The notes below the pieces were generated by a model. That model saw nothing but the letters and a program-made list of their open reading frames with translations. It ran no database searches and was not told the origin of the DNA. Position numbers and translations under genes: made by a program. From Gekko japonicus (Eukaryota), in contig NW_015159716.1 in assembly GCF_001447785.1 (NCBI RefSeq), forward strand, positions 1,192,303 through 1,256,302: a DNA stretch of 64,000 nucleotides. The letters are read 5' to 3'. Shown piece by piece: positions 23,298 through 54,907 of this stretch (position 1 is its first letter; every line of letters starts with the position of its first letter).

Positions 23298-23372
23298 CAG
23301 ACGTCAGTCCTCTCCTTCTGTGGGACTCAGCAAAAGCAGTTATCCTGGGCCAGCTGATTGCAATCTCCTCCG
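23298..23372 (-). CDS. ZNF-A 75-nt exon (AEEIAISWPRITAFAESHRRRGLTS), at the KRAB-B position
   Basis: Acceptor cccatccacag|CG and donor CTG|gtaagt; phase 1-1; paralogous to 54833-54907 with mostly synonymous differences. Confidence 0.9.
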
Positions 23373-25335
23373 CTGTGGATGGGAGAAGTGGAGGGTGCAA
23401 GTTAGAAAAAAGCTATGAAGACCTGGGCAGTGCATAGTCATTAAAGGGCCACTTTATCTTTTGGGGAAGAAATGTGACATCAAATTAATATGGTTTTACG
23501 CAGAGCTTTGAATGTAAAGCTACTGTTAAGGTAGGCTACCTTTCAGTGACATGGGGATCTCAACTTCTAAGGAGCAAAGGTCACAGAGGACAGTCCTAGA
23601 AGCCAACTGTTTGGTGTTAATGGCTAAGATACATATGAACTCACTACACTTCAGACAACGGAATGGGAGCACTGGCCCCATGGAGAAATGCCATCCGCTC
23701 TGGGATGGCTTTTTTTTGGTCTTGGGGCAGGAACTGACTGCCGTCTTGTGTCAACCAACCTGCCGGCTAAGGTTGTTATCCACGACCTTGTTCCTTATGT
23801 TCCTACCTGCTGAGGTAAAGTTGGGGGAGACCAGAATTGGGGTTTTCTCAGGGATAGTACTTAAGTTGTGGAAAACCCTCCTGCCAGAGATTTAGTTTGA
23901 AGTACAAATCTTAGGTGCCAGCGGAAAACATTTTTCTTTGATCGGGCTTTTCAAACACATGAAGCTGCCTTACATTGAGAGAGAGACCATTGGTCTATCT
24001 AGGTCAGTACTGGCTACTCTGACTGCCAGTGGCTCTCTAGACTCTAAGGTAAAGGTCTTTCACAATAACCTTCTGTCTAATCCTTTTAACTGGAGATGCC
24101 AGGTATTGAACCTGTGACCTTCTGCACCCAAAGCAGATGCCTCTACCGCTGAGCCATGGTAACAATGGTATGCCTATGGACCGGCCTTGCTGAGATGCTG
24201 TTATTGCTGAAGTTATTTAATGACACACTTAACTTCCTGCATGCTGAATTTGCTCTCTGCATTTTTATTCTGTATTTTTACCCTGCTCTTTTATTCATGT
24301 TTTTTTGGTATTGTTTTAGTGTTACTTCGGTGTTCCTTTAATGATTTCATTGTTACCTGGGGATATTTTATAGAGAAGCAGCAAATAACTTAATCCGGAA
24401 GTAAAGCAAACATTAATCGTAAAGCTGGCTTTGTTGGGAATGCAGAGTCAGAGGAGAGATGGAATGTATGTGTGTGATCATTCTGTCTGTTCAAAACATT
24501 ATTGGATAATGTGTTATGTACTGGTGTCTGAACTGTAGTGCCATTCTTGTTTGACTTTTATACAGATACAACATACAAGTGCATATAGAGGGCCCCCTGA
24601 TCTCTCCCGCTTTGTAGGTTCTGCTCCCGAACCTCTTCTATAGATGCAATCACAGGAAACCTTCTTTGTCGCTGGTTCCCATGCCACCAACTCGACAGCC
24701 CCAGATCCTTCTCTTCAGGACAGGCAAAGGGATTTCTTTTGCATCCCTTTTACCCAGTCTCTGCTTCCCCCATCCCGGTTCCAGCTTTTTATCTCTGTCT
24801 TGATCCAGATAGCCCAGGCTACCCCGATCTCATCAGATTTCAGAAGCTAATCAGGGTCAGCCATGGTTAGTATTTGGATAGGAGACCACCAAAGAAGTCC
24901 AGAGGTCATTCCGCAGAGGCAGGCAATGGCAAACCACCTCTGAACGTCTCTTGCTTTGAAGACACTACAGGTTGCCTGAAGTCAGCTGTGAGTTGATGGC
25001 ATTTTCTACCACCAGGTTTTGATCTTGAATAGGACACTGAAGTTTACTTGTTTGTTACGTATCTGTCTCTCTTCTGATATTTCCCTTTTGAACGGGGTTG
25101 TTGTGTCAAACTGGGACTGGTGAAAACCCTAGACTGGACAATCTGCAGTTTTTAAATTGAATTCTACACCTCTAGAGGACACTTCGCGTATGACAGCCTG
25201 ACACGAGGACTGATGATCAATCCCGATTGTTACAAACAAATTCAAGAGAGAAGGATTTATTTGGCATAACCCCCTCTAACCTAAGCCTGTGTTTTTACTA
25301 ATACATTCTGATATCTGGTAAAAAGGCATTCTTAC

Positions 25336-25439
25336 CCAATGAGATCACATTCTCATAGTTCTCTTGCATGATGTCACTCTCTGGGAGATGCAAAAAAGTA
25401 CTTCTGTAGAGTTGCCAACTTGTGAACCACGTGGCAGAA
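25336..25439 (-). CDS. ZNF-A exon with the C-terminal remnant of KRAB-A; probable start ATG at 25369 (MQENYENVISL)
   Basis: Acceptor ctctctccgcag| at 25439 and donor TTGG|gtaaga. MQENYENVISL matches the end of the KRAB-A box. Spliced CDS 34+75+231+1895 nt is in frame (744 aa). Confidence 0.85.
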
Positions 25440-28437
25440 CTGCGGAGAGAGAGGAGTTAAATCTCCTGGAGACCTAGAGGATCCCTTTCTGTGTTGCATG
25501 GGAAGGCAGGAGACTCGGTGGGGTGGCATACCAAAACACCGGGTTCAAAACACAACATTAGAACTTTCCCAAAAACTACTCTGTCAAGTGACTGCCCTGT
25601 CAAGAGAACCTATCCTGTGTAGTACATTTGAGGGTGTGACTTTCATTCTTAGCAATGGGCATATGCTCTCTAGGTACCATAAAAGTGTGGCAAAGCAATC
25701 GGTGCCTTTCCCTCAAAAAGTTTCCATCCCCGATGGACTGCATCTTGTCACAGGCTCAGGATGCTTCCTAACAGAGGTACACCAGGAAAGCCAGCATGAT
25801 GTAGTAGTTTGAGTACAGGTCCAGGTTCGAATCCCCCCTTTCTGCCATGGAGGCTTGCTGGGTGATTTTGGGCCAGTCATACACACTCAGACTGACATAC
25901 CTCACAGGGATGTTGTAAGGATAAAATAGGGAAGGGGAGAATGTTGTAAGCCACTTTGGATCTCTGTTTGGTCCCTAAAAACCTACTCTTCTTCATCTTC
26001 TTCTAATGGGGGGAGGGGGAGAAGTGTAGTGTAGTGGCTACAGGTTAGACTTAGCACACAATCTCTCAGCCTAATCCACCTTGCAGGGCTGTAGTAAGGG
26101 GGGGAGTTGAAACACCTCATATATTCCATTTGAAGAAGGGTAGTATGGGGCAAATGTATTAAATAAATAATGGAAGGAGAAGGACCCATTTGGTAGAACA
26201 GCAGCTTCCTGGTTTTTCTGCAGAATCTAAATGCCATCTGGAAGCTTACACAACGAGAGATTTGGAAATTGAACTTAGAGTGCATTGTTATGGGCCTAGC
26301 CCTTTTCAGAAATTACACCCACTCATGTATTGGGAATAAATGCTCTCCATGATGCTCTCTATACATGCTGTTGCCATTAGGTGGAACAGGGCAATGAACG
26401 TATTTTGCATGCATGTACAGGTTCAGTATGCATGAACCAGAAACCTGGGAAATCCAACCATTGGTTTTTTGTATGCCAAAATATGTACATTGCTCTGTTC
26501 AGATGACTGTGCATAGCGGGAGCATGACAGGTGGTGTGCATCCCCATATGCATGAGGATGTAACATCCAAAGGGGTTGTTTTTTGTTTGTTTGTTTGTTT
26601 TTGTAAAATTCAGTTCTGCCTGCAGGGTGGAAGGGTTTACAATGGGCTTAACTCTCTGACGGGGCATTTAGTCAACATAAAACTGGATAATGTTATCCTA
26701 GAAGTTCCAAGGCACATGGATGCTAAAACAGTTGAACAGCTGCTATTTCTAGAATTCCATTAGGAACATCTAGCATTTGATGTGGTGAAGAGGAGAACTG
26801 CAGACGATAGGGACTGCCCTAGCATCCCCCTCCTGATTTTCAAACAGCATCGACCAAGTTCTCCGTTCCTCTATGTGCCAATACTTCAGACTGATTTCAG
26901 TAAAATGCAGACTTCACTATAACCAAACTATCAGATCAAGGGGGCACAGGCAAGCCCACATAGGTCTACTCCAGAGGAATTGTACTTAGGATGAGAAAGC
27001 CTGAATTCAAGTCCTCCCTCAGTTGTGAAATTTTCTGGGTGACCTTAAGCCAGTAGATCTTTCTCTGCTGAACTCCCTTGGCCAGAGCTCCTTGCACGGA
27101 GGATAAATAAAGGTAAGAATAAAAACCAGTCCTGAACATTCTGTCGCACTCTAGAGTGATAAAGGAACAGAACAGAGAACAGGGCCTTGCAGATGCAAAA
27201 CGGTGGGTCTGTGCAGGAGCTAGTTTGGCTTTTCAGAGGCTTGGGTCACTGCGACCACCAGGGCAGGAAGCAGGAGAATGTAAGCTCAGTTTCTATGGAG
27301 AAAGATAAAAGCATTGCTTGGGGCCACAGTTATGGTAAGAGCCAAAGCACATGACAATCATTCGCAGGGATTCAGTGGTGAAGGGTGAAGTGTGCCTCTC
27401 TGGGATATGCACTGAATACAAACTTTTCTTCCACACATGCCCTGATTCAACAGGGAAAGGAACTGTCCCTTTAATCCAGCACAAACCAAACCTCCTTTCG
27501 CCCTCCAGGTTAAAAAAAAAAGACCCTCACTGATGCTACAAGGACAACAGCACAGCCTTATAAACTGGTCTGTGGTCATCTAAAGTTGTCTCATACACCA
27601 TGGAGGCCGCTACTCACTTTTCTCTGTTGTACCTTGAGCAGAGCCAGCCCCTGCTTGCCTGAGATCCTTTTCTGCCAGAAATGCCAAGGCTACAGGGAAA
27701 GCCTAGGCTCTGTCATTCAACTCACCGCCACTCCCCACATCTCCACCTTCAGGGTTTTGAACTCACATTCCAAAGATCTTGGAAGGGGTTGACAGAAACT
27801 GCATCAGTTTGGCTATCTAAATACTTACAAATGCGCACTCAGCATGTAGCATTTTTGATAATCCATATACAACACTGTCTTTCAGGAATGAGAAACATTT
27901 TTTCCAGCGCCACACAGAAGTATGCACTGAAAAGACGACCCCCAAACCCTCTTTTACCAATCGTTAACACCCCCAAAACTGAATAGCTAAAGGGAGTTAA
28001 TGAGTAATGAATCAGATAAGTGCTGTTGAATATGTGCCCAGAAATTGTATGTGTGCATGCATTTTCCTCAACTCAGTTCCCCGGGGCAGCATATTTCTCA
28101 TGAAAGCAGCAGGTGCCCAGTGGGAAATCTTACCCTAACCAGGTTTGTTATAAAAGCACACAGACACACTCGCCAAGCGCACAAGCAGCAAAGGCAGGTG
28201 CATACATTCCCAATCCCCGACAGCAACTATGAGCACTTTTTCTGTCAGAAAAACAAGAAAAAATGAAGAGTTACGGAGGACAGACAGGAGAAAGCTAGAT
28301 AAAACATTAGAGAAAGAAAAAAGGGGTGGTTACAAAGAAGGGAAGAACAGTATTTATTTTCAGTTTTTAACTTTCTCCCCTCCTCTATTTATTTGTAAGA
28401 AACGACCTAGATCTTTATGTACTCCATGTACAGTTAC

Positions 28438-29200
28438 CTTTATGTACAAAAAATCCCCCCAAATCTGGTTCCCACTGCAGTTTTCTCTCTACTGCACAAA
28501 ACGGGACCAGATCCACGTTGGAATAACCCCTGCCGCTATGGGTACCAAGAAAGTTTTTCGTGCGACGGGTGCTGGAGCGGTGGGAGCAACAAGCAGCCGG
28601 CTCCTATACACGTTTACTTGGAGGTAAGACCCAGTGAATTAATGGGACTCTCAGGTGAGTGTGACCGGGACGGCAGCCTTGGATCCCTCCCTTTCTGCTG
28701 ATTCTTTCGCGGGGTTGGCGGAGTGTTCGCCCTCTCCAGAAATAATGGGTTGTGTTCTTTTATTTACCCTTCTCTTTCAAATCCCTGGAGTTTCCAGCTG
28801 CTCAAGGGTTAATGGCTTGACCCGGGGTTGCCTCCTCCTCCTCCTCACCCCCGGGCGGGGTAGTGCGGGGGGTTCCCAGCCGGATCCAGTCCCCCACCAC
28901 GGCCGGCCGCGGGAAACCCCTGGTGCGGAGCGGCGTCCCCTTGGGGGCATCAGCGGCTGCTCTGTAGGGGGCGGGGGACGCCCGGGTCACTATGGATTCA
29001 GCAGCAGCCTTCTGACCCAGGAAGCTCAACCCCGGATACAGCCGGCAGAAAGAAGCAGGGGAAAGACAGCAAGCCCCCTTTACTGAACAGCCGCAGCCAG
29101 GGCCCTCTGCTGGCTTCCTGGAATTTCCTACTCCATCCATGAAGCATTTCCGGCAGCCGGTAGATAGCCGCGCTGGGCCATCAAAAGTCATCACCCCAAC
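28438..29200. promoter_or_regulatory. CpG-rich island, candidate ZNF-A promoter and first exon
   Basis: Local CpG enrichment and GC boxes (gggggcggggg at about 28966). Minus-strand donor AAAG|gtaact at 28438; plus-strand donor-like sites at about 28623 and 28654. Confidence 0.6.
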
Positions 29201-30033
29201 CAGACAGCGAGCAAGTTTTTGGGTTCTATAGATCTCTTCATCAGGTTGGATTTTGCCCGGGAAGAGGATAAAAAGATGTGTCCAGGCGCTAAGGTTATCA
29301 GTCTCCAGGTGGTGCCTGGAGATCTCCTGGGATTACAACGGATCTCCAGGAGATGGGGATCAGTTTACATGGAGAAAATGGCTGCTTTGGAAGGTGGACG
29401 AGGTGGCATTATAACCCGTTGAAGTCCCTCTCTCCCCAAACCCCGCCCTCCTCAGGCCATAGCCTCAAAATCTCCAGGTATTTCCCAACCCAGAACTGGC
29501 AACCCCGCCAGGCACGTTGGAGAAGTCTTTAGTTTGCAGACTGGCGGTTATATGGGTTTCTCCAGCAAAAATCAATCATGGCATTATATTCAGAGCCAAC
29601 ATGAAGGACGTATAGAGTCTCAGTTACCAGCTATCATTGCTTCTAGGAAACGTGTATTAAGATTGCCAACTGACCAGGAAAACACCAGGTCTGGGCTGCT
29701 CTTGTGACCAATGTTCCCTCTAAGCCGTGGAGTCTTGTGAGCAAAAATTCTACTTTGTGAGCTACTGGCATTAAAGTTGTGAGCGAGCGATTTGGCTGCT
29801 GCATAAATTAGTTTGCTCTGGAGCCCTCCTTCCTGAGCTAAGAAAAAAATGTGTGAGCTGGAGGCTAAAAAACTGAGCTAGCTCACACTAACTCAGCTTA
29901 GAGGGAACACTGCTTGTGACCTAAGTAAGCAATGTTTGCCCATCAAACTGCTTTTAAAAGCACAGCCAAGAGGGCTGGATAAAAAGTTGTAATCAAATAG
30001 GATTGACAAGTTGTTGAAATGCTAAATTTAAGA

Positions 30034-30286
30034 TCATAACAGGATAGGGAAGTATTATTTGCCCTGTTGGGGTAAAGTTAAGGTTACCTCTGCTAAGCAA
30101 ACGGGGGGCCATTTCAGGTCAGAAAAATGGAATGAGGGGGAAGAATCAGCAACCACTTGAGCCACCGCAGCTCATAACAGGATAGGGAACTATTATTTGC
30201 CCTGTTGGGGTAAAGTTAGGGTTACCTCTGCTAAGCAAACAGGGGGCCATTTCAGGTCAGAAAAATTGAATGAGGGGGAAGAATCA
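30034..30286. repeat. Local direct duplication, two units of about 115 bp
   Basis: 30034-30148 and 30172-30286 are nearly identical, with a 23-bp spacer. Confidence 0.92.
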
Positions 30287-30409
30287 ACCCTTACTCAGTG
30301 CCATGGACCCTATCCAAATTGGCCCCTGGCATGCCTCAGATTCAGATTTTTAAAAATCCCTGGGAACTCAAGACGTGCAACTACCAACATGTCCGGCTTG
30401 GCCCTCACA

Positions 30410-30670
30410 GTGTGTGTGTTCTCTGCCATCAAGTTGCTTCTTACCTATGGCGACCCTATGAATTAATGACCTTGAAAACATCCTATCGTTAACAACCTTG
30501 TCCATTTCTTGCAAACTGAGAGGCATGACTTTTCATGATTGAGTCAATCCATCTCATGTTGGGTCTTCCTCCTTTCCTGCTGCCTTCAGCTTTTCCTAGC
30601 ATGATTGTCTTTTCCAGTGAGCCTTGTCTTCTTATGGTGTGACCAAAGGACGATAGCCTCATGTTTTGGT
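30410..30670 (-). mobile_element. RTE-clade LINE 3' end fragment
   Basis: gagtcaatccatctcatgttgggtcttcctcctttcctgctgccttc...tttcctagcatgatt is the reverse complement of a typical RTE ORF end (GSRKGGRPNMRWIDS). Confidence 0.7.
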
Positions 30671-34587: not shown

Positions 34588-34641
34588 ATGGGGTCGCGAA
34601 GAGTCGGACTCGACTGTGCGACTGAACAACAACAACAACAA
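34588..34641 (+). mobile_element. Very short BovB-type 3' end insertion with (CAA)n tail
   Basis: atggggtcgcgaagagtcggactcgactgtgcgactgaacaacaac; TSD atgaacacag at 34566-34575 and 34642-34651. Confidence 0.85.
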
Positions 34642-34662
34642 ATGAACACAGGCCCAGATTTA

Positions 34663-36807: not shown

Positions 36808-38339
36808 TTAGCACGGTACAATATCCTCACACTTTGTAGAAGCTGGTATGAGCATAGTCTCTTCCATCGGGTGGGCGTGGTTACGGAGGTGCCTGTAGAG
36901 ATATGCGGTGCCACGGAAGCGGCGACCACACTGGGGGCAGGGATACGGCCTGTCGTCTGCATGCATGCACTGGTGCCTAAGCAGGGCCGATGCATCAGCA
37001 CAGGGCTTCCCACAGTCACCACAAGTGCGGGCAGAGAGTTGAGCACCGTCTGAGTCGAGGTGGTGGGCGTGCTGGTGGCGCTGGAAGTGCAAGGTGCTGT
37101 TGAAGCTCTTGCCACAGTCCGGACAGACGTGAGGCTGGCCGCCAGCATGGGTGCGCTGGTGCCGATAGAGGTGAGAGGTGCGCCCAAAGCGCTTGCCGCA
37201 GTCCCCACAAGAATATGGCCTTTCCCCAGTATGAATGCGCCGATGCCGTTCCCAATGTGAGCTCCAGGTGAAGCTCAGACCGCACTCTCCACAGTGATAC
37301 GGCTTGTCGGCCGAGATGTGCAGGCGTCGGTGCTGGGCCAACTGGGTTCGAGCACCAAAGCTCTGCCCGCACTCACCACACCCATAGGGCTTGTCGGCGG
37401 TACCATGGAGCCGACGGTGGCGAGCCAGCTGTGACCGTCCTCCAAAGCTTTGTCCACACTCTGAACACTGGTGGTGTTGGTCACCACCCATTAAGTGCAA
37501 ACGCTGGTGTTTCACCAAGGCTAAACCATCAGCAAAGGCCTTGCCACACAGGGTGCATTTGTAGGGTTTGCGGCCACGGTGGGTCCGCTGGTGCTGGTCG
37601 AAGTGCAGTGTGGTGCTGAAACTGCGCCCGCAGTAAGTGCAGATGTAGGCGCGGGTGACGTTAGCGGCAGCATTGGTGCCGTGGGTGCGCTGGTGCCGGT
37701 AAAGATGGGAGCTGCGGCTGAAGCGCTTGCCGCACTCGTTGCACGGGTAGGGCTTCTCCCCAGTGTGGATCCGCAGGTGCCGGGCGAAGTGTGAACTCCA
37801 CGAGAAGCTCTTGCCGCAGTCGCTGCACTGGAAAGGCAGGCGACCGGTGTGAAGCCGCTGGTGAGTTACCAGCTCCGTGTTGCGGCGGAAGCACTGGCCA
37901 CAGTCGGCACACTGGTAAGGCAAGCCACGGGAGGGCATCAGGGAGGCCGGGGGAGTGACCGCCGCCGCGTTAGCATTGGCATGGGCCCTCTGGTGCCTGT
38001 ACAGGTTGGAGCTGACATTGAAGCTCTTGCCACACTCTCCACAACAGAAGGGGCGCTCCCCCGTGTGCGTGCGCCGGTGCTTGCTGTAGTGCGAGCTGCA
38101 ACTGAACACCTTCCCGCAGTCTTCGCACTCGTATCCCTTCTGCAGAACCATGATGGGTGGCCCCTCTCTCGTTAAAACCTTGCCGCCGCCACCAACCTGT
38201 TGCACCACCCTCCAGCGGAGGCTCTTACATTCCCCAGAAACCATGCTGGCATCCAGCTGTACCACCTTAGGACCGTCCCGCTGTTGAACATCTTCCTCCT
38301 CACTCTCCTCCTCCTCCTCACTGCCCAGTCCCTCACCTG
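36808..38339 (-). CDS. ZNF-B final exon: acidic linker plus 14 C2H2 zinc fingers
   Basis: ORF 36808-38361; tandem acceptor tgtcttccag|cag|GT GAG (38339 or 38336), phase 1. Confidence 0.96.
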
Positions 38340-38376
38340 CTGGAAGACACAGACATGACAACTTGTTACATAGGAT

Positions 38377-39824: not shown

Positions 39825-39929
39825 CTAAATTGGCTCTTCTTGGGTTCTCCCTTCTTCCAGGCTCTGGGATGCAAGGCTCTTCTTCATCTTCCACAAGGAA
39901 AATCTCATTGGATTCAGAACTTGAAGATC
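39825..39929 (-). CDS. ZNF-B KRAB-B-like exon (SSSSESNEIFLVEDEEEPCIPEPGRRENPRRANL)
   Basis: Acceptor ttttttccctccaagcag|GA and donor TTAG|gtgagg; 105 nt, phase 1-1. LVEDEEEPCIP resembles the KRAB-B LExGEEPW motif. Confidence 0.8.
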   Translation of the reverse strand, partial: DLQVLNPMRFSLWKMKKSLASQSLEEGRTQEEPI

Positions 39930-42915: not shown

Positions 42916-43044
42916 TGAGTGCCACCAGACTTTCACAAGGCTCTTGGCGTGTTTCCCTGTAGATAGGCTTCTGGTTAGGATCTACAACGAGCCACTCATC
43001 CTCCATGATCTGGCACCAGCCCAGTTCCTTACAGATGACAGGAC
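42916..43044 (-). CDS. ZNF-B divergent KRAB-A exon (GPVICKELGWCQIMEDEWLVVDPNQKPIYRETRQEPCESLVAL)
   Basis: Acceptor ttcttcttgtttcag|GT and donor CTCA|gtaagg; 129 nt; aligns with the KRAB-A pattern PVTFEEV..EEW..LDP.Q..LYR.VMQENY..L.SL. Confidence 0.85.
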
Positions 43045-44951: not shown

Positions 44952-44989
44952 CTGAAAGGCAGGGAGACACCCCCTTCCCACCACCACGA

Positions 44990-45660
44990 TTTCTGATCTC
45001 CTCTCTATTCTTTATGATCCTCCGCCCCCCTAACCCTCCTCCCCGCCTTCCTGCCTCCCCCTCCTCGCCTCTCAGCATCAGATCCCAACCACCAGCGGCT
45101 TCCTCCAGCCCCTTCCTGTGTCCTTGCAATACCAAACCGGTCTGCAACCTATTGCTTGCTTGCTTTTCTTCTTTTTTTTTTGGAGTGGTCGCTAATAATA
45201 TAAAAAATTAATAAATCACGAGGGGAGTCTCCGGATTTCGCAGGCATAATCCATTCACTCTTGAACCGGAAGCACCAGGTAATCGAGGAGCTACCGAGAG
45301 CGGGAGAAAGAGGGAAAATGTTGGGAAGGGGAGGAAGGAAAGCGGGCGACTCCGGATCGGGCTCGGCTTTCTAGCCCCCTTCTCCCCACGCTGACACGCC
45401 CGGGATCGAGAGGAGATGCCGCTGCCGGAGAAGCAAACACGCCCCACTATGGAACAGTAATCTAAGAACCGAGGCTTCCTTGCAGGCAGGAAAAGAGGGT
45501 AAGGCGAAACGACGCTTGCAAGTCTTACGCGAGGCTGTCCTTAATCCTGACTTCATCCCCCTTCTGGGGAGGTTCGGCCCCGTGCCTCTCGAGTGCGTCT
45601 TATTTCTCACATCTGCATGCCTCTCCTTTCCGCCGGGGATTTCGGGGTAGTTTACGGTCT
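44990..45660. promoter_or_regulatory. CpG-rich bidirectional promoter for ZNF-B (minus) and ZNF-C (plus)
   Basis: High CpG density between divergent genes; ETS-type accggaag at about 45265; plus-strand donor GAGG|gtaagg at 45498. Confidence 0.75.
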
Positions 45661-47450
45661 GATGCTCACAACAGCCTTGCGAGGTAGTTTAGGCGGAGAG
45701 ATTGCAACCTGCCAGGAAAAGCTGGTGAGCTCTGAGTAGGAACCTGAATTTTTGTGTGTGTGTGGGGGGGGTCCCTCAGACGCGAATCTAGTGCTCTAAC
45801 CACTACACCAAACTGCCTCTCAGAGTCTCAGTCTGAGGGTGGCCTTGCTGCTAGAGGTTCTTCAAGTGGAGATGCCAGCACTGAATTTAGGGTCTCAAGC
45901 GTGTGCTGTGAATTTGGGTTGCCACTTTGGCGTGGGAAATTCCTGGAGATCTGGGGGTGGAGTCTGGAGAGGTCGCTCAGCAGGGAGGCAGTGCCATAGA
46001 GTCTGGCCTCCAACGCTGTCCTTACCTCCAGGAAACTCTTCTATGTGGTCTGAAGGTCAGTTGTAGTTCTAGGACAACCGTAACTGTGATCCTCCATCAC
46101 GTGCATCATCACATCTGTGTATTCCAGTCTGGGTTCATCATGAATCTAAAATCATGACCATCACCTTGGTTCTAGTGCCCCTTCGTTTTTACTAGGCTGT
46201 GTTCCCCCACAACGGTGAGATCCTTAGTAGTTATAAACACAAAGCCAGAGTATGAGTGTTCTTTCTGAATGTGCAGTCGGAAATAAAACCACAATGTGTA
46301 TACATGGGGGGGGTGGGGGGTTGCATGGCTTTGGGTCCGCCAAGAAGTCTTGAGACTTGTCCCAGATGGATGGATCCCTGCATGCCCTTTGTGAGCACTG
46401 CACAGACATCCTCTTAATCACTTGATGCAAGTTGGGCACCCCTCAAAAACAGTTTTTATTCACACACACCCCTTTTTAGTCTCCTTTATGGGGTAGAAGG
46501 CTTATGGATGGATAGCTGGTGTGTTATGGTGGTTAGAGTGCCAGACTCCAACCTGGGAGCCCCAAGTTCAAATCCCCACCCTGCTATGAAGCTTTCTGGG
46601 TGGACATAGGGCAGTCGCTCTCTCTCAGCCTCAGCTACCTCACAGGGTTGTTGTGAGGATACAAACGGGGAGAGTAAAGAACTATCTACCCTTCCCTGGA
46701 CTCCTTGGTGGAAGGGTGGGGAAAGAATGCACTATACAAGTAAGTGACGAAAGTCTGGGCTTTTGTTTTGACTGTTTCAAAGGAATTCAGGGCTCATTCT
46801 GAAGACCCTTGGCCAGAATTAGCCAAAGCAGAATGATATGTCAGTACAGTTGCCAACTCCAGGTTTGGAAATTCCTGGAAATTTGGAGATGGAACCTATG
46901 GGAGGGCAGGGTTTGGGGAAGGGAGGAACCTCAACTGAATATAATGCCATAGAGTCCACCATCCAAAGCAGCCATTTTCTCCAGGGGAACCGATCTCTGT
47001 AGGCTGGAGATTGCTTGTAATTCTGGGAGATCTCCAGCCCCCAACTGTAGGATGGCAACCTTATAAGCCAGTAGGTGCATCTTTGCCTGATTTATTAAGT
47101 TTGCAAACATCCTACTTATTCTGCTGCAATGTTAGATTGTTGTTGTTGTTGTTTAAATTGCAGAATGTATACAGGCCTTCCAGTAGAAGCTCTTGGCTCC
47201 CCCAGTTCTTATAGAGAAAGGCCTTGGCTCTTGGCTCCCCCAGTATACAGCTCTTGGCTCCCCCAGTTCTTATAGAGATTGTTGTTGAACAAAGAGCATG
47301 GAAACAATTTGGCAAGACTGGCAATTTCCCTAGACATTGGGTGTGATTATTACCAATGTGATTATGGCAGAAGGGTAATAGGGTGAAGCTTGTTACTGCA
47401 AGAATGAATGCGACCCGCAAGGAAGTGGGTGATTGTGTCTTTTCCTCCAG

Positions 47451-47524
47451 GGATAGCAGTGTGTGGACTCTTCTGGATCCCAGCGACGACATGCAGGAAA
47501 ATTATGAGAATGTGATCTCTTTGG
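47451..47524 (+). CDS. ZNF-C exon with KRAB-A remnant; probable start ATG at 47491 (MQENYENVISL)
   Basis: Acceptor tgtcttttcctccag| and donor TTGG|gtaagg; upstream WTLLDPS is a residual KRAB-A trace. Spliced CDS 34+75+2222 nt is in frame (776 aa). Confidence 0.85.
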
Positions 47525-47571
47525 GTAAGGGCGGTTGTTATTATTATTTATAAAGCACCTACAGTGTCTTA

Positions 47572-48084
47572 GGTTGCGGTTCCACGTGCCAAAAAAAATG
47601 GGGGGGGGGAGCGAGGCTATTTCCTTCGGAGGAATTTGACCCGCAGCTGCACGATCACACGTCCCTTTGAAGCTGCGGCCACAGTCTGTCAGTGCGTGAT
47701 CAGACGCAACTGCGGGTGGGCCTTTCCCCCCCCATGCGCTTAACCGAAGGGTTGATGAATCGCACCTCCCCACCGAGGGCTCCCTATGGAGTTTGCGATT
47801 ATGTGCATAACAACGGCATGGAGTTGGGATGGCCTGATCAGACCATCCCGATGCCATGGGAGCGTGCTGGAGCAATCAGACAGGGGAAAGTCCATCCATG
47901 GCCCATCGCAACCCATTAACTACCGGATTTTCCCTGGTGTCTTTTAACCCCACTTCTGTGGCGGAGCAGAATGGGTTGGCGATGGCTGCAGGGCGCTTCC
48001 CAGATGTTGTTGTCTGATCGCACCCTTTAAATCCTCCCAGCATTCGCACCTATGTCGGATCTAATTATGTGTATGATTGCAACC
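47572..48084. mobile_element. PIF/Harbinger-like non-autonomous element
   Basis: Ends ggttgc / gcaacc; TTA TSD on both sides; CpG-rich interior. Confidence 0.7.
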
Positions 48085-48664
48085 TTAGGTTCCTTCTCTC
48101 TGCTGTTGTTGGAACATCTGATGCTAGGGAATCACAGAGTTTGACCTTATGAACAAAGTAGCCCAGGGCGAGGTCATAACAAGGTATTCAGGAATTAGCT
48201 TGTGGAATTCACTGCTACGGGATGTGCAGATTGCTTTTTAAAGGATAGAGAAAAGGAATTAGTTCTTCACTCACGGAGTAATTACATTCCGTTGGCCATT
48301 AGCCCCCTCCCTCTCTGAATTGTGGCTATGGGTTAAGGTAAGAAAAACAGTTGGCCCATGCTAACTACTGAATTAAGTAACTAAACTGCTACTTCTCACT
48401 AAGTCAAGAACATATACTTTATTTATAGCTCACCTTTCTCACTGAGACTCCAGGTGGATTACATGACATAAAAATGTAAACAAATACCATGAGATATCTA
48501 ATAAACAGTGTAATAGGACATGCCATCCATCTCTCCTAAAGAGGCAACATTTTATTTTCCCATTAAAATAACTGTCATTTTTGTTGCTTGCTCTTCAACC
48601 CTTGCACATGTCACACAACTGAATTGCCATCTATAGGACCGTACCTTTGGTCCACTTAGCCAAT

Positions 48665-51575
48665 GGTGGTGTGTGCAATCGCCCACTTGATCAAACCCTT
48701 GAGGCTGATCTTGAGAAGGAAATAAGGGAGGTCACTGAAGCAGACAATTTTATTATACTGGGCGACTTCAACTACCCGCACATTGACTGGGTAAACATGG
48801 GCTCAAGTCATGCTGTAGAAATGAGATTCCTAGACATCTTAAATGACTGTGCACTGGAAGAGTTGATCACAAAGCCAATCAGAGAGGAAGTGATCTTGGA
48901 CTTGGTTCTGAGCGGGTTTCAAGACCTGGTGAGAGATGTAGAGGTTCTTACACCAGTTGGAAACAGTGACCACAATGCTATTAAGTTCAGCATTCACATC
49001 AATGGAAAGTTACTCCTAAAGTCCAAAACTGTAATACTTGATTTCAAAATGGCAAACTTTACAAAAATTAGGGGAATAGTAAAAAGGAAGCTTTTTAGGG
49101 GACAAAAGAGAGTCAAATCTCTAGAGGATCCTTGGAAGCTATTTAAAACCACACTAATTGAAGTCAAAATAGAATGCATTCCACAGGTTAGGAAAGGCAC
49201 TGCCAAGTTTAAAAGAAGGCCTGTGTGGTTAACAACGCAAGTCAAGGAAGCTATAAAGAGGTTTCTTTTAAAAAGTGGAAGGTCTGGCCCAGTGAATTGA
49301 ACAGTAGCGACCACAGCCTATGGCAAAATAAATGTAAGTCAATAATTAGGCATGCAAAAAGAGATTTTGAGAAGCAGCTTGCTAAAAGTATCAAGACAAA
49401 CAAGAAACATTTTAAAAATTATTTCTGAAGCAGAAAACCAGCCAGAGAAGCAGTGGGGCCTTTGGATGACAAAGGACTAAAGGCATTGCTCAAGGAAGAT
49501 GAAGAAATGGCAGAGAAGCTCAATGACTTTTTTGCTTCTGTGTTCACTGTGGAAAGTGTGGGCTCATACCCATGTCACAGCCTCTATTTTCAGGAAGGGC
49601 GTCTGAAGAATTGAACCAAATTGAGATGACCAGAGATGAAATTCTAGACCAATTGGGGAAATTAAAAACTGAAAAGTCTCCAGGTCCTGATGGCATACAC
49701 CCAAGAGTTCTTAAGGAACTCAATTGTGAGATAGTTGATCTACTAACCCATACACGTAACTATCTCTAAATTCAACTGCTGTACCAGAGGATTGGAGAAT
49801 AGCAAATAGTACACCAATTTTTAAAAAAGGGATCCAGAGAGGAACCAGGAGATTACAGACCAGTTGGCCTAAAGTGTCCCAGGCAAATAAAGAAGAAGAA
49901 GAAGAGATTGGATTTATAACCCGCCCTTCACTACCCAAAGGAGTCTCAGAGCGGCTTACAAACTCCTTTCCCTTCCCCTCCCCGCAACAGACACCCTGTG
50001 AGGTGGGTGGGGCTGAGAGAGCTCTTGACAGAAACTGCTCTTTTTCAAGGACAGCTGTGCCAGAGCTTGTGACTGACCCAAGGTCACATCAGCAGGTGCA
50101 AGTGGAGGAGTGGGGAATCAAACCCGGATCTCCCAGATTAGAGTCCGCACACTTAACCACTACACCAAACTGGCACCAAATAGAAACTGTAATCAAAGAC
50201 TTGTTAGGCACATAGAAGGGTAAAGCCTGTTGAGGGAAAATCAGTATGGTGTCCACAAAGAGAAGTCCTGCCTCACCAACTTTTTGGAATTCTTTGAGAA
50301 AATGAACAAGTACGTAGACAATGGTGACCTGGTAGACATTATATACTTGGGCTTTCAAAAGGCTTTTGACAAGGTACCTCACCAAAGACTCCTGAGTAAA
50401 CTTGGCAGTCATGGGATAAGTCTTATGGATTAAAAACTGGTTGAATGACAGGAAGCAAAGGGTAGGAATAAATGGATAGTTCTCACAGTCCCACAAGGAT
50501 CGGTGCTGAGGCCGGTACCATTTAATTTATCCTTAAATGATCTGGAGCTAGGGGTGAGTAGTTCAGTGGCCAAGTTTGCAGATGACACAAAATTATACAG
50601 GATGGTGAAAACCAAGTCTGTCTGTGAAGAGCTCCAAGAAGATCTCAACAAACTGGGTGAGTGGGCGGCAGACAGACAAATGAGGTTCAGTGTTGATGAG
50701 TGTGAGGTGATGCACATTGGCACGAAAAGTCCCAAATTCAGGTTTAGGCTAATGGGGTCTGAACTTGCTGAGACTGAGAGGGGAAAAGATCTTGGGGTCC
50801 TGGTGGATAGCTCAATGAAAGTGTCAACCCAGTGTGCTGCAGCGGTAAAAAAAGGCAACTCTATTTTAGGGATGATTAGGAAAGGGACTGAGAGTAAAAA
50901 GGTTGGTATTATAATGCCCCTGCATAGATCTGTGGTGCAACCTCATTTGGAATACTGTGTACAGTTCTGGTCACCGTATCTCAAAAGGACATTGCAGAGC
51001 TGGAAAGAGTTCAGAGGAGGGCAACCAGGATGATTCGGGGGTTGGGACACCTTCCCTATGAAGAAAGGCTGAAGAGAATGGGGCTTTTCAGTTTAGAAAA
51101 GAGATGACTAAGGGGGGAAGTTTATAAAATTATGTATGGGGTGGAGAAAGTTGACAAAGATAAATTTCACCCCCCCCCCAAAATACTAGAACTTGAGGGC
51201 CTCCAATTAAACTGATGGGCAGTAGGTTCAGGACAGACAAAAACGCCACTTTATACAGAGAGTGGTTAAAAGGTTGAAATTCACTGCCAGAGGATGTAGT
51301 GATGGCCACAGGAATAAACAGCTTTAAAGGGAGATTAGATAGATTCATGGAGGACAAGTTTATCAATGGCTACTAGCCACGATGACTGAAGGAAACCTCC
51401 ACATTTAGAGGCACTAATCCTCTGAACCCCAGAGCCAGGAGGCAACATCAGGGAAAAGTCTCAGCCTCCATGCCCTGTTGTTGGCCATCCAGAGGAACTG
51501 GTTGTCCACTGTGTGAGAGAGGATGCTGGACTAGAAGGACCATTAGTCTGATCCAGCAAGGCTTTTTTTACGTTC
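48665..51575 (+). mobile_element. CR1 LINE, 5'-truncated, decayed ORF2 (APE endonuclease and reverse transcriptase), with a SINE inserted at about 49889-50175
   Basis: Fragments ILGDFNYPHIDW, SDHNAIKF, KSPGPDGIHPRVLKEL, KAFDKVPH, KFADDTKL and [12 protein letters not shown]; several stops and frameshifts; CR1-type 3' UTR. Confidence 0.95.
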
Positions 51576-52011
51576 AAAGTCTCCCATTGGGGTCTTTCCC
51601 CAGCTATGCTCCTGAAATCCTTTTAACTTAGGAGGTCCCAGGGACAGAGGAGCCTAGGACCTTCTTCATTCCCAATTCACGGCCTGTTCCCCAAAGTGTA
51701 GAATGCTGTACAAAGTCAGACCATTGGCCTATCCAGCTCACTGTTGTCTGCTTCGACTGACAGTGACTCTCTGATGGGAGGGGGGAAAGGAGATTCTTTC
51801 CCAACTCTTATTATTCTTTAACCAAAGATGCTGAGGATTGAACCTGAGACCTACTGCTTGCAAAGCACTGAGTGACAGCCCCTTCCCTGAATCTGTCAGG
51901 CAAAGGAACGGCATTGGAGAGTAGGCTACCTTTCAGAAAAGCTTGTCCTCTCTTATTGATGTTCTCTGTGAGGAACCAGAATAAGCTTTCTTATAAGGCT
52001 TATGCTTGGAC

Positions 52012-52301
52012 CAGGCCCGTAGCCAGGATTTTTAAAGTCAGGGGGCATTTAAATTTCTTAAGGGGCACTGGCTAATCAAATTGAAAGTAATATAATTGAG
52101 TTTCTGAGGGAAATAGGTGCTGTTTGGCTCCAGGTGGCCACCGTAGCTGGTCCTTCATGCCAGACGGCTGTGCAGGAATACCTGGCTCCTTCCCCACACC
52201 TACCACTGCTCAGGGGCCCTTGGCTGGATGGGAAGTCGGGAGGCCTTGCCAGTAAGTCAGGGGGCCTAGCCCCAAGATGCCCCACTGTAGCTACGGGCCT
52301 G
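52012..52301. mobile_element. hAT-type MITE
   Basis: TIR caggcccgtagc / gctacgggcctg; perfect 8-bp TSD gcttggac. Confidence 0.88.
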
Positions 52302-54832
52302 GCTTGGACCCTTTAAACATCATCCCAGCATGTTCAGTGGGGCATCACTGCAGTGAGTAACTGCCTCACTGCTAATTTGTTGTCAGCCTCAGTGCTAATT
52401 AATGGCAGTCCTTTTGCATGTAGTTCAGTGACTTTGCATATGAAACTTAGTAGGGGAAAAAAACCCTTGGCCAGCAAAGAGCTCTCTCGGGCACAAGATG
52501 CAGCATCCTGACTATATCCGGTTTCACTTGGATTTGAACAAATCAGAAATGGGTAGTGTCCAGTGTTCCCTCTAAGCTGAGTTAGTGTGAGCTAGCTCAC
52601 AGTTTTTTAGCCTCCGGCTCACACATTTTTGTCCTAGCTCAAGAAGGATGGCTCCAGTACAAACTAATTTATGCAGTAACCAAATTGGTTGCTCACAACC
52701 TTAATGCCAGTAGCTCACAAAGTAGAATTTTTGCTCACAAGACTCTACAGTTTAGAGGGAACATTGGTAGTGCCTGGCTCTCTCTTCGTCACTGGATCCT
52801 CACAACAACCTTGTGAGGTAGGTGAGAGAGCAACTGGCCAAATATAGGTTTAAAGTATAGTGGGGTTTTAGACCTAAATCTCCCCGATCTTTGCCTGGTA
52901 CTCTAAATGCAGGTGTCCCCAATCTTATTGAACCTATGGACAATTTGGAATTTTGAGAACAGTTAGGGAGCACTACAATGAAATGGCTGTCATGGGAACC
53001 AATCACAAAATATTGGGAATTTCTACAAAATGTTAGGTGGTTCCAAGCCAAGCATCCCCCTATCATTTTTCCAAATGGGTGCTCCCTGGAGACCCAAAAG
53101 TGATGCCTCCTGGGCTCTTCTGAAGCACNNNNNNNNNNNNNNNNNNNNNNNNNNNNNNNNNNNNNNNNNNNNNNNNNNNNNNNNNNNNNNNNNNNNNNNN
53201 NNNNNNNNNNNNNNNNNNNNNNNNTGGATGCTGTGGTGTCCACAGGCACCGGGTTAGAGGCCACTGCTCTGACAACTATACCATTCTGGCTTTCTCGTCA
53301 TTATCATAAGCAGTAACAAAGCACTTCCAGGTTGTGGAGGCACTTCACATACAATACTTCACACCTGGTCTAAACAATATATTTGCCATGTTCTTGTCTG
53401 GTGACATGATATTTGGCAAGAGTACTTGTCACAGGTATTGACTGTTACAAATATTAATCTTCATGGTGTGATGTACAGGATTTTTTTTAAAAAATACCAC
53501 TTTCCTCAAAGCTGTAGTCATTTCTTATCCTGTAAGTCATTGCAAGTTTTTTAAAGGAAGTTGTAGAAGCCAGTAATTTGAAAGGAGAACCATAGACAAG
53601 GATGGCTAGAGAGTCCCCATTCTTTCAGAGAGTTTGGAATCAAAACTCATGGTGAAGCTGTTGAAGTGAATTCCTGAGGTGCCAAGCAACTAATTCAATA
53701 TGACAGATGCATGTGGAAAGTCTTATAGATAAACAAATACGTCATATGAAAACAGAAATGTCCTCTCGATGCCTGCATTGTCTAGATCAGGTCACAGTAA
53801 TTCTTAAAACTGCCCTGTAAGACAGGTTAGCTATTATTTCCATAAGAGATCAGTAACTCATATTGTCATCTCCACAACTGGAGGTTTGGGGAGGGGGAGA
53901 CTGAAGTTGAGAGAATAATTCCTTACCTAAAGCCATCCAGTGAATTGCCACCTATGGAAAAACTAACTTCCTAGCTCACAGGTCACACTTTTATCTAGGA
54001 CCCAAGTTCTGCAAATAACTGAATGGTATCTTAAGATCTTGAAAGATGAGAGTAGGCATTGAATGGAGTTTCCGATGTCTAGCAGATGGGACATCAAGTG
54101 TGCCCTGTACAGTTGTCCTGCTCCTATGGAATCTCGCCTTTGTTTCCTTTATTGTCCTTCTGCTTCCTGGAGTATGCTGACTGCAGTCCCCAGCAAAAAA
54201 GCAAACACAACAAAACAAAACCCTGTTTGAAAAGCTAGGCCCTGTAGAAACAGAGTAAAAATGTGCCAAACAGATATGAAAAAGTGAAAGTCATGTATAT
54301 GATCTGTTCTAGGGTTGCCAGGTCTGGGTTGGAAAATACCTGGAGACTTTGGGGGTGGATCCGGGAGAGGGTGGGGGGTTGGGGGAGGGGAGGGGACCCA
54401 GCAGGGTACAAGGCCACAGAGTCCCCCCTTCAAAGCAGCCATTTTCTCTAGGGGAGCTGATCTCTGTCAGCTGGAGATCAGTTGTAAAAGCAGATCTCCA
54501 GGCCCCACCTGGAGCCTGGCAACCCCAAACTGTTCTTAGGCATGCTTACTTGGAATGGAATTATATTGATTTCAGCAGGGCTTACTCTCAAGTAAATATG
54601 TTTTGGAAGGATCAGAGCCTGAGAGTTTTTTCTAGGGAAGGGCATAAAACATACAAAGCCCTTATCTCTGGGGGATGGGTTGTTTTTTTTACCAAATTCC
54701 TAGGTCACAAGGTGGGGCCTAAATGAGGGCAGGATGATTTGGGGATGGTACTTCTGCATTACCAAAGTGCTGCATCTAATTTTGTTTTAAATTGCATCCT
54801 CCCCTCCCCCTGTTGTCCCCCGCCATCCACAG

Positions 54833-54907
54833 CGGAGGAAATTGCAATCAGCTGGCCCCGGATAACTGCGTTTGCCGAATCTCACCGGAGAAGAGGACTG
54901 GCACCTG
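54833..54907 (+). CDS. ZNF-C 75-nt exon (AEEIAISWPRITAFAESHRRRGLAP)
   Basis: Acceptor cgccatccacag|CG and donor CTG|gtaagt; phase 1-1; paralog of 23298-23372. Confidence 0.9.

What the first reader, a model, noticed from the sequence alone, without database searches (positions are those of the whole stretch)
23298..54907. Invariant 34-aa N-terminal module built from a beheaded KRAB in two inverted ZNF paralogs
Seen: ZNF-A (25369-25336 plus 23372-23298) and ZNF-C (47491-47524 plus 54833-54907) both encode MQENYENVISL-AEEIAISWPRITAFAESHRRRGL. All 34 residues are identical, although 12 codons differ synonymously (hand count). Clear similarity begins essentially at the Met, and I see no similarity in the surrounding introns beyond the splice sites. 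Known: MQENY..V.SL is the last helix of KRAB-A, and the missing front part (FEDV..W..L..LY) is needed for TRIM28/KAP1 recruitment. Inference: both proteins start at the internal KRAB Met and use the stump plus a remodelled KRAB-B-position exon as a new interaction motif under strong purifying selection, i.e. a TRIM28-independent effector domain. I do not recognise this peptide from any described family.
Basis: partly seen in the sequence, partly recalled or inferred. Interest (0 to 1): 0.8.

Follow-up and report, generated by a model that had tools for sequence, protein, structure and literature searches.

The report
Beheaded KRAB stump heads reptile zinc-fingers
Two gecko zinc-finger genes start with the same 34 amino acids, made from the last helix of a KRAB repressor domain plus a reworked KRAB-B exon; this stump is almost unchanged in lizards, snakes, turtles, crocodilians and birds, so it is probably a working docking motif that no longer uses the usual TRIM28 contact surface.

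Summary
ZNF-A (minus strand) and ZNF-C (plus strand) encode the same 34 residues from two small exons. Twelve codons (13 bases) differ and every change is synonymous (pS 0.62, dN 0; P about 2e-9).

RNA contigs from three runs of two studies give the ZNF-A exon joins. The KRAB-tail exon is 104 nt (25439-25336). Its first 70 nt are 5' leader. The preceding exon carries an in-frame stop with no ATG after it, so MQENY is the first in-frame start.

Pfam KRAB matches only profile positions 29-41 of 42. Exon 2 aligns weakly with the start of KRAB-B and keeps the KRAB-B exon phase.

This is not a gecko oddity. The module heads at least three paralog lineages across Sauropsida, and it is 34/34 identical in a turtle, a parrot and another gecko. 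No mammal or amphibian relative turned up, and Pfam, NCBIfam, PDB and the paper library hold no match. The middle gene, ZNF-B, has a half-beheaded KRAB.

TRIM28 independence is inferred, not tested. The ZNF-C start and the continuity across its intronic assembly gap were not shown by reads.

I rate it a new variant of a known kind, of moderate interest. The scan had not noted it before.

The parts
28768..29012 (-). ZNF-A first exon (5' leader). It holds a 58-codon uORF (ATG at 28950, weak Kozak context) that ends inside the exon. In the MQENY frame a stop lies 13 codons before the exon end.
   Evidence: RNA contigs of X1, X3 and X5 end at 29002-29012 and are joined 28768|25439 with GT..AG on the minus strand. 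Frames come and the ATG context.
25336..25439 (-). ZNF-A KRAB-tail exon, 104 nt. It has 70 nt of leader (the decayed front of a KRAB-A exon), then ATG at 25369 and MQENYENVISL, and ends in phase 1.
   Evidence: Joints 25439|28768 and 23372|25336 appear in contigs of three runs. Pfam KRAB matches positions 29-41 of 42 at 18.1 bits.
23298..23372 (-). ZNF-A exon 2, 75 nt, phase 1 to 1, a remodelled KRAB-B exon. It encodes (A)EEIAISWPRITAFAESHRRRGL plus TS.
   Evidence: Searches give the sequence, another the joint, and the hhalign match to the start of KRAB-B.
22177..22407 (-). ZNF-A exon 3, 231 nt, phase 1 to 1. It is a second conserved helical module (..DLRRQLGLILQTAGRSQVEKMLRELVKEQ..) and is absent from ZNF-C.
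   Evidence: tblastn with P0034, P0067 and P0104, sequence, invariant columns, AF2 helices 67-79 and 82-102.
15120..17014 (-). ZNF-A finger exon: acidic linker, about 13 C2H2 fingers and a Ser/Pro-rich tail ending SSLIN.
   Evidence: ORF, Pfam, acceptor ttacag|TG. The Gekko japonicus model P0034 is 99% identical.
47451..47524 (+). ZNF-C KRAB-tail exon. The coding part 47491-47524 gives MQENYENVISL. The 5' edge at 47451 is only predicted, from the acceptor ttttcctccag. The in-frame upstream letters read ..SVWTLLDPSDD, a possible relic of KRAB-A W.LLDP.
   Evidence: Pfam KRAB matches positions 29-41 at 19.2 bits. There is no RNA evidence for this exon.
53129..53224 (.). Assembly gap inside ZNF-C intron 1. 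It was not filled.
   Evidence: It is flanked by repeats and LINE ORFs at 48647-51033.
54833..54907 (+). ZNF-C exon 2, 75 nt, phase 1 to 1. It encodes (A)EEIAISWPRITAFAESHRRRGL plus AP.
57867..60091 (+). ZNF-C finger exon. It is entered directly from exon 2 (G|CA GAT GAT..), with no exon-3 module.
   Evidence: Acceptor ttccag|CA, ORF. The bird model P0152 has the same junction, GLVADDGLLSENEEE.
42916..43044 (-). ZNF-B KRAB-A exon, 129 nt, Met at 43006 (MEDEWLVVDPNQKPIYRETRQEPCESLVAL). This is a half-beheaded KRAB.
   Evidence: tblastn with P0154. Pfam KRAB scores 23.3 bits, above the 20.4 cut-off, over profile positions 13-41.
39825..39929 (-). ZNF-B KRAB-B-like exon, 105 nt, phase 1 to 1.
36808..38336 (-). 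ZNF-B finger exon.

Best explanation
The two small exons are the 3' third of an ancestral KRAB-A exon and a remodelled KRAB-B exon.

Shown for ZNF-A: the front of the KRAB-A exon has decayed into 5' leader, and translation starts at the conserved KRAB-A methionine (the M of ..DVMLENY..).

Shown: the resulting 34-residue N-terminus, MQENYENVISL-AEEIAISWPRITAFAESHRRRGL, is under extreme protein-level purifying selection. It heads a family of C2H2 zinc-finger genes found throughout Sauropsida.

Predicted: it folds as a two-helix hairpin. This corresponds to the C-terminal half of KRAB-A helix alpha3 plus the first KRAB-B helix, which in canonical KRABs packs on the side of alpha3 that faces away from KAP1.

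Inferred: the zinc fingers bring the protein to DNA, and the hairpin is a docking surface for a conserved partner. Most published KAP1/TRIM28 contact residues are missing (D8, V9, I11, F13, E17), so recruitment is unlikely to go through the canonical KRAB-TRIM28 interface.

In ZNF-A-type and in the roughly 620-aa paralogs, a second conserved helical module (exon 3) probably acts together with it. ZNF-C-type proteins carry the hairpin alone.
For: Sequence identity and synonymous-only divergence: 13 of 13 changes are synonymous, pS 0.62 and dN 0 over 78 non-synonymous sites, against dN 0.13-0.55 in the rest of the two proteins.

Spliced RNA contigs from X1 and X3 (study P1) and X5 (study P2) show the joins 28768|25439 and 25336|23372 with GT-AG. 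The contigs run on for 789 and 1,637 nt beyond exon 2, and the runs were picked because they hold the finger exon.

There is an in-frame stop in the first exon, 13 codons before the join, with no ATG before MQENY. The only upstream ATG opens a 58-codon uORF in a weak Kozak context, whereas both main ATGs have a purine at -3.

Pfam KRAB matches only positions 29-41. hhalign places module residues 1-27 on KRAB-AB positions 30-54 (P about 1e-3). The exon phases are those of KRAB-A and KRAB-B.

ZNF-B next door keeps KRAB positions 13-41.

The module is 34/34 identical in Sphaerodactylus, Melopsittacus and the turtle Platysternon. It is 24-33/34 identical in other squamates, alligator, ostrich and seriema (20/34 in a penguin model). 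Of the 32 gene models that contain exon 1, 25 start exactly at this Met, and the few upstream extensions are unrelated to one another.

AF2 predicts helices 3-17 and 19-30 with pLDDT 73-91.

Stoll et al. 2022 (PMC9753469) list the KAP1 contacts D8, V9, I11, F13, E17, E35 and N36. They also note that the first KRAB-B helix is predicted to pack on alpha3 opposite the KAP1 surface.
Against: No binding, repression or activation data exist, so the function is inferred.

The module keeps the equivalents of E35 and N36, so a residual TRIM28 contact is not excluded.

The similarity of exon 2 to KRAB-B is weak (hhalign probability 16-21%; my own HMM gave E about 0.07 against 29 sequences).

The ZNF-C transcript structure and start are not supported by reads. 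Its upstream frame stays open for 43 codons and contains an ATG that lies beyond the predicted acceptor.

Some gene models (P0034, P0123, P0124, P0157, P0158) skip the KRAB-tail exon. One (P0067) reads an upstream ORF into it.

The runs are labelled RNA only by guess. That they are cDNA follows from the spliced contigs and the mostly uncovered introns.
Confidence: 0.62

Rival explanations
1. A minimal KRAB that still recruits TRIM28/KAP1. The retained alpha3 end (M-Q-E-N-Y, with the E35 and N36 equivalents), perhaps helped by the exon-3 helices, would be enough to dock on the sauropsid TRIM28 coiled-coil, so these would be ordinary repressors with a shortened domain.
For: E35 and N36 are essential KAP1 contacts and both are kept in ZNF-A and ZNF-C. 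The strict invariance fits a conserved partner, and TRIM28 is one candidate.
Against: The hydrophobic core contacts V9, I11 and F13 and the salt-bridge residues D8 and E17 are absent. In the roughly 620-aa paralogs N36 is replaced by S in most species. In human, 17 of 18 tested variant KRABs did not enrich KAP1 (fold-change above three in only one), even though their KRAB-A is full length (PMC6745500).
Confidence: 0.12
2. Not an effector but a self-contained regulatory or structural N-terminus, for example an oligomerisation hairpin, a stability or degron signal, or (through HRRRGL) a localisation signal.
For: It is a short amphipathic helical hairpin with a basic HRRRGL tail. KRAB-family accessory domains such as DUF3669 and SCAN do oligomerise (PMC6923878 title and abstract).
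Against: Invariance at nearly every one of 34 positions is more than a simple localisation or degron signal usually needs. No coiled-coil or known oligomerisation fold was found.
Confidence: 0.15
3. The Met is internal. At least ZNF-C, or other isoforms, would carry upstream coding exons, possibly with more KRAB-A, so the protein would not really be beheaded.
For: The ZNF-C frame is open for 43 codons upstream and reads ..VWTLLDPSDD.., which resembles KRAB-A W.LLDP. The Sphaerodactylus model P0067 extends upstream.
Against: In ZNF-A the RNA contigs put an in-frame stop upstream. Of the 32 models that contain exon 1, 25 start at the Met, and the extensions in the others share no similarity. Pfam finds nothing upstream of profile position 29 in either gene. 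The Cariama C-type model starts at the Met.
Confidence: 0.08
4. The identity is kept by gene conversion or by a nucleotide-level function such as a splicing enhancer or RNA structure, not by selection on the peptide.
For: The 3' block of the two finger exons has a lower dS (0.54) than the module, which hints at conversion elsewhere in these genes.
Against: 62% of synonymous sites differ while none of 78 non-synonymous sites do. Similarity stops at the exon edges. The same peptide is kept in turtle, bird and other lizards.
Confidence: 0.02

Closest known systems
Canonical KRAB domain (KRAB-A plus KRAB-B; Pfam PF01352) of tetrapod KRAB zinc-finger proteins
   Same: The M-x-E-N-Y-x-N-(L/V)-(V/I)-S-L motif is the same. 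So is the exon layout: a KRAB-A exon ending in phase 1, a small phase 1-1 exon, then one large finger exon. The position at the N-terminus of a C2H2 array also matches. The predicted helix pair matches alpha3 plus the first KRAB-B helix.
   Different: The module lacks profile positions 1-28, which hold alpha1, alpha2, the first part of alpha3 and most KAP1 contacts. The Pfam score is below the gathering cut-off. The glycine at the A/B junction is Ala. The end of KRAB-B (LEQGEEPW) is replaced by AESHRRRGL. The exon is 75 nt instead of about 96.
Variant-KRAB KZFPs (vKZFPs) of Helleboid et al. 2019, PMC6745500 (examples recalled from memory: ZNF282, ZNF777, ZKSCANs)
   Same: They are old, conserved KZFPs whose KRAB has left the consensus and which mostly do not bind KAP1. 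They are thought to have taken on other partners.
   Different: Those keep a full-length, diverged KRAB-A. Here the domain is physically truncated to its last 11 residues and is much more conserved than typical vKRABs. The family is sauropsid, not mammalian.
ZNF-B of this same window and its lizard orthologue (P0154)
   Same: It is a neighbouring gene with the same three-part layout and an N-terminally shortened KRAB that starts at an internal Met.
   Different: ZNF-B keeps KRAB positions 13-41 (MEDEW..), passes the Pfam cut-off, and has an acidic KRAB-B-like exon. It lacks the AEEIAISWPRITAF peptide.
Host-transposase fusions that capture KRAB exons (Cosby et al. 2021, recalled from memory, not read here)
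   Same: Lacertid models P0150 and P0151 splice the two module exons onto a Tigger transposase ORF. The module therefore behaves as a portable N-terminal effector cassette.
   Different: That is a side branch seen in gene models only. The genes in this window are ordinary zinc-finger genes.

Membership tests
KRAB domain (Pfam PF01352, KRAB-A box) | A match to the whole 42-position profile at or above the gathering score (20.4 bits) | tested here: not met
   ZNF-C scores 19.2 bits and ZNF-A 17.5-18.1 bits, and only profile positions 29-41 are matched. The turtle N-terminus P0153 scores 11.5 bits.
KRAB domain (Pfam PF01352, KRAB-A box) | N-terminal KAP1-contact residues (D8, V9, I11, F13, E17 in ZNF93 numbering) | tested here: not met
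   The residues are listed in PMC9753469. In ZNF-A the region upstream of the Met is untranslated, with an in-frame stop in the first exon. It shows no profile match.
KRAB domain (Pfam PF01352, KRAB-A box) | The end of the C-terminal helix, MLENYxNLVSLG, with E35 and N36 | tested here: met
   MQENYENVISL aligns to profile positions 29-41.
KRAB domain (gene architecture) | A KRAB-A exon ending in phase 1, a short phase 1-1 KRAB-B exon, then the fingers in one large exon | tested here: met
   The exon ends and phases come from the sequence and the RNA joints. The KRAB-A exon is 104 nt rather than the canonical length of about 127 nt, a figure I recall from memory.
KRAB-B box | Sequence similarity to the KRAB-B consensus (..SKPDVIxxLEQGEEPW) | tested here: inconclusive
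   hhalign aligns ISWPRITAFAE with sKPdvIxxLE at P 1.1-1.6e-3 but with only 16-21% probability. My own HMM gave E about 0.07. Pfam has no hit for exon 2.
KRAB domain (function) | Binds the TRIM28/KAP1 RBCC and represses on tethering | not testable with these tools
   This needs pull-down or reporter assays.
Unnamed sauropsid MQE[NS]YE..ISLAEEIAISWPRITAF zinc-finger family (defined here) | The 34-residue module at the extreme N-terminus, followed by a C2H2 array | tested here: met
   ZNF-A and ZNF-C carry it. 38 public proteins carry the exon-2 motif and 32 also carry exon 1.
Unnamed sauropsid MQE[NS]YE..ISLAEEIAISWPRITAF zinc-finger family (defined here) | The second helical module, PD[LF]R[RK]QL..ILQT.G..QVEKMLRELV.EQ (exon 3) | tested here: met
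   It is present in ZNF-A at 22177-22407. It is absent from ZNF-C, where tblastn finds no hit and exon 2 joins the finger exon directly. It is therefore a feature of two of the three lineages, not of the whole family.

The most novel reading that the evidence does not exclude
The back side of the KRAB domain, meaning the end of helix alpha3 plus the first KRAB-B helix, is an independent functional unit. In the sauropsid ancestor, at least about 280 million years ago by my estimate from memory of the bird-lizard-turtle split, it was freed from the TRIM28-binding front. It has since been kept almost letter for letter as a TRIM28-independent docking motif for an unknown conserved cofactor, in an MHC-linked cluster of zinc-finger genes.
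Probability: 0.4. Interest if true: 0.7.

Novelty: new variant of a known kind. Interest (0 to 1): 0.55.

Why it matters
Work on KRAB zinc-finger proteins is almost entirely mammalian and centred on TRIM28. This module is a natural dissection of the KRAB domain: the part that touches TRIM28 is gone, and the part whose role is called 'accessory' has been frozen for the whole history of reptiles and birds.

If the 34-mer recruits its own partner, that would give KRAB-B and the end of alpha3 a function of their own. It would also point to an unknown cofactor pathway in sauropsids, and it would offer a very small tethering module to test.

There is a practical gain too. The RNA-supported structure corrects the public model of this gene, P0034, whose N-terminus is not supported. 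It also gives annotators a signature for a family now named at random as ZNF2-like, ZNF345-like, ZNF135-like or ZNF260-like.

Tried and rejected
I could fetch no orthologous DNA, so there are no cross-species codon alignments and no check of upstream stops in other species.
- The third word search, with the ZNF-C finger exon (residues 1-330), was swamped by generic zinc-finger proteins. It returned no ZNF-C orthologue among the 120 listed.
- The protein-atlas search failed once. The second try gave only chance-level hits, with scores of 0.77.
- Foldseek of the AF2 model against PDB gave nothing below E = 4.
- phmmer and a profile search against PDB sequences gave nothing. NCBIfam gave nothing.
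- A full-text search for three motif strings found no paper.
- The raw RNA run X22 gave almost no reads on the exons, so the evidence comes from contigs of other runs.
- I first guessed that the ZNF-A exon began at a 'cccag' 11 nt before the ATG. The RNA joints show the acceptor 70 nt upstream, so I dropped that idea.
- The roughly 620-aa MQESYETVISL paralog is not ZNF-B and is not in this window.
Exons were searched one by one by reference, and public gene-model proteins served for the joined N-terminus.

Full report
**What is there.** The window holds three C2H2 zinc-finger genes downstream of an AGPAT1-like gene. They are ZNF-A (minus strand, finger exon 17014-15120), ZNF-B (minus, 38336-36808) and ZNF-C (plus, 57867-60091). 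The ZNF-A finger exon is 99% identical to a Gekko japonicus RefSeq model, P0034, so the window is that gecko or a very close relative.

Both genes give MQENYENVISL, a split Ala codon, and then EEIAISWPRITAFAESHRRRGL. All 34 residues are identical. Twelve codons (13 bases) differ and every change is synonymous. The last two codons of exon 2 differ (TS against AP).

By Nei-Gojobori the module has pS 0.62 and dN 0 over 78 non-synonymous sites. The chance that 13 random changes are all synonymous is about 2e-9. The rest of the two proteins has dN 0.13 to 0.55. blastn between the two loci aligns only the exons plus 5 to 10 flanking bases. All other hits between the two 5' regions are interspersed repeats.

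**The gap.** The N run 53129-53224 lies in ZNF-C intron 1. It is 5,604 nt after the exon-1 donor and 1,608 nt before the exon-2 acceptor, in a repeat-rich stretch with LINE ORFs. It touches no coding letters, and the reading frame across it is set by splice phase, so its length does not matter for the frame. I could not show by reads that the scaffold is continuous there. The support is indirect: the same exon order and orientation as in ZNF-A, and a bird model (P0152) that joins the same three coding parts.

**Transcript structure and start codon.** The one reads call was laid on 23250-29249. Contigs of three runs from two studies carry the joins 28768|25439 and 25336|23372, both GT..AG on the minus strand. 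The contigs begin at 29002-29012 and run on for 789 and 1,637 nt beyond exon 2. These runs had been picked because they hold the ZNF-A finger exon. Their introns are mostly uncovered, so they are cDNA.

The KRAB-tail exon is therefore 104 nt (25439-25336), with 70 nt ahead of the ATG. In the MQENY frame these 70 nt are open. The frame continues into the first exon, where a stop lies 13 codons before the exon end, and no ATG lies between that stop and MQENY. The only upstream ATG (28950) opens a 58-codon uORF that ends inside the first exon and has a pyrimidine at -3. The main ATGs of ZNF-A and ZNF-C have A and G at -3.

For ZNF-A the protein therefore starts at MQENY. The public model P0034, which skips this exon and starts at 29191, is not supported by these contigs. 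For ZNF-C I have no reads. A strong acceptor at 47450 would give a 74-nt exon in the same phase, and the in-frame letters before the Met read ..SVWTLLDPSDD. That looks like a relic of KRAB-A W.LLDP with a deletion, but this is a visual impression only, because Pfam does not align it.

**Relation to KRAB.** Pfam KRAB (42 positions) matches both genes only at positions 29-41, with 17.5 to 19.2 bits against a cut-off of 20.4. The exon ends in phase 1, and the next exon is a short phase 1-1 exon, as in KRAB-A and KRAB-B.

I built a KRAB-AB alignment from 20 canonical KZFPs returned. hhalign against it places module residues 1-27 on KRAB positions 30-54 (MQENYENVISLAEEIAISWPRITAFAE against MLENYxxLVSL--GxxxSKPDVIxxLE). 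P is about 1e-3 and the probability 16-21%. That is suggestive but not strong.

ZNF-B, which lies between the two genes, has a 129-nt KRAB-A exon whose Met (43006) opens MEDEWLVVDPNQKPIYRETRQEPCESLVAL. Pfam scores this at 23.3 bits over positions 13-41. An acidic KRAB-B-like exon follows. The cluster therefore shows two degrees of beheading.

According to Stoll et al. 2022 (PMC9753469), KAP1 contacts are made only by KRAB-A. They involve D8, V9, I11, F13, E17, E35 and N36. The first KRAB-B helix is predicted to pack on the face of alpha3 opposite KAP1. The module keeps E35 and N36 and that helix pair, and it lacks all the other contacts.

**Distribution.** A word search with residues 1-100 of the Anolis orthologue (P0104) returned 35 proteins, all sauropsid. 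They fall into three groups:
- ZNF-A-type proteins in geckos, Anolis, Varanus, snakes, budgerigar and kea.
- A roughly 620-aa type starting MQESYETVISL in many squamates, alligator and ostrich. It is not in this window.
- A C-type without exon 3 in the seriema, mis-fused to GABBR1.

The exhaustive phmmer search of 1.84 billion representatives, with ZNF-A exon 3 as query, gave only 17 hits. All the named ones are sauropsid and include the turtle Platysternon.

The 34-mer is 34/34 identical in Sphaerodactylus, Melopsittacus and Platysternon. It is 24-33/34 identical in most other members (20/34 in a penguin model). Residues 12-14, 16, 19, 22, 24 and 27 never vary in the 37 full-length 34-residue windows compared. 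Of the 32 models that include exon 1, 25 start exactly at the Met, and the few extensions are unrelated to one another.

Since both A-type and C-type occur in birds and in the gecko, the duplication is older than the bird-lizard split. The near-saturated synonymous divergence (dS about 1.3) agrees with this.

**Structure and known families.** AF2 was run on the turtle N-terminus with a 43-sequence alignment. It predicts helices at 3-17 and 19-30 (pLDDT 73-91) and at 67-79 and 82-102 in the exon-3 module, separated by a disordered linker. Foldseek against PDB, phmmer and profile searches of PDB sequences, NCBIfam, Pfam (apart from the KRAB tail), the ESM Atlas and a full-text search for the motif strings all gave nothing. 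The precomputed Pfam lists of all family members hold only zinc-finger families.

**Interpretation.** The anatomy is well supported. It is a KRAB stump made from the end of KRAB-A plus a remodelled KRAB-B. It is translated from the conserved internal Met and frozen by selection across Sauropsida.

The mechanism is inferred. I take the stump to be a two-helix docking motif that brings a conserved partner to the DNA sites bound by the fingers, without the canonical TRIM28 interface. Human variant KRABs, which are full length but diverged, mostly fail to bind KAP1 (PMC6745500). That makes loss of binding likely here as well.

The rivals are a residual TRIM28-binding mini-KRAB, a structural or regulatory N-terminus, an upstream start in ZNF-C or in other isoforms, and nucleotide-level conservation, which is practically excluded.

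**Limits.**
- I had no reads for ZNF-C.
- The third word search was uninformative.
- The window's exons were never joined into a spliced protein for searching. Searches were run exon by exon by reference, or with public gene-model proteins.

**Verdict.** The finding is real, conserved and not described in any library I could search. It is a new variant of a known kind of domain.

Noticed in passing
window 42916-43044, 39825-39929, 36808-38336 (minus strand): ZNF-B, between the two paralogs, has a half-beheaded KRAB. Its near-canonical 129-nt KRAB-A exon has a Met at 43006 that opens MEDEW.., which Pfam KRAB scores at 23.3 bits over profile positions 13-41. An acidic KRAB-B-like exon follows. 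The Phrynosoma model P0154 starts the same way.
   Followed up: partly
window 22177-22407 (minus strand): ZNF-A exon 3 encodes a second module that is very conserved and predicted helical (PDLRRQLGLILQTAGRSQVEKMLRELVKEQ, with 14 invariant columns in 43 sequences). It matches no Pfam, NCBIfam or PDB entry and has only 17 relatives among 1.84 billion representatives, and all the named ones are sauropsid. ZNF-C lacks it.
   Followed up: partly
window 28774-28950 (minus strand): The ZNF-A first exon holds a 58-codon uORF (MPPRGRRSAPG..) in a weak Kozak context. The Sphaerodactylus RefSeq model P0067 reads a 56% similar ORF in frame into MQENY. In the gecko of this window the uORF stops inside the first exon.
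   Followed up: partly
window 28159-29191 (minus strand); protein P0034: The public Gekko japonicus model of ZNF-A starts at 29191, uses an exon at 28242-28159 and skips the KRAB-tail exon. It also splices out a piece of the finger exon. None of this appears in the spliced RNA contigs laid here.
   Followed up: partly
proteins P0150 (Podarcis raffonei) and P0151 (Zootoca vivipara): In lacertid lizards, an isoform model splices the two module exons (33/34 and 32/34 identical) onto a Tigger1-like transposase ORF (Pfam DDE_1 and HTH_Tnp_Tc5). This may be a host-transposase fusion.
   Followed up: no
protein P0152 (Cariama cristata); window 1132-10397: The bird C-type gene is mis-fused in its model to GABBR1, and this window carries an AGPAT1-like gene upstream of ZNF-A. 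From memory, both neighbours are MHC-linked in human, so the cluster may belong to the sauropsid extended MHC.
   Followed up: no
window 15108-15817 against 59388-60104: The last three or four fingers and the Ser/Pro tail of ZNF-A and ZNF-C are 82% identical in DNA. Their dS is 0.54, much lower than in the N-terminal module (1.3) or the rest of the finger exon (2.2). This may mean gene conversion of the 3' block.
   Followed up: partly
window 45200-45800: A CpG-rich stretch (observed/expected 0.6-0.97) lies between the 5' ends of ZNF-B (minus) and ZNF-C (plus). It is a likely shared bidirectional promoter and the likely site of the unseen ZNF-C first exon.
   Followed up: no
window 48647-51033 (plus strand): LINE-type endonuclease and reverse-transcriptase ORF fragments sit inside ZNF-C intron 1, upstream of the assembly gap. 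Repeats shared with the ZNF-A locus flank the gap (52561-52771).
   Followed up: no
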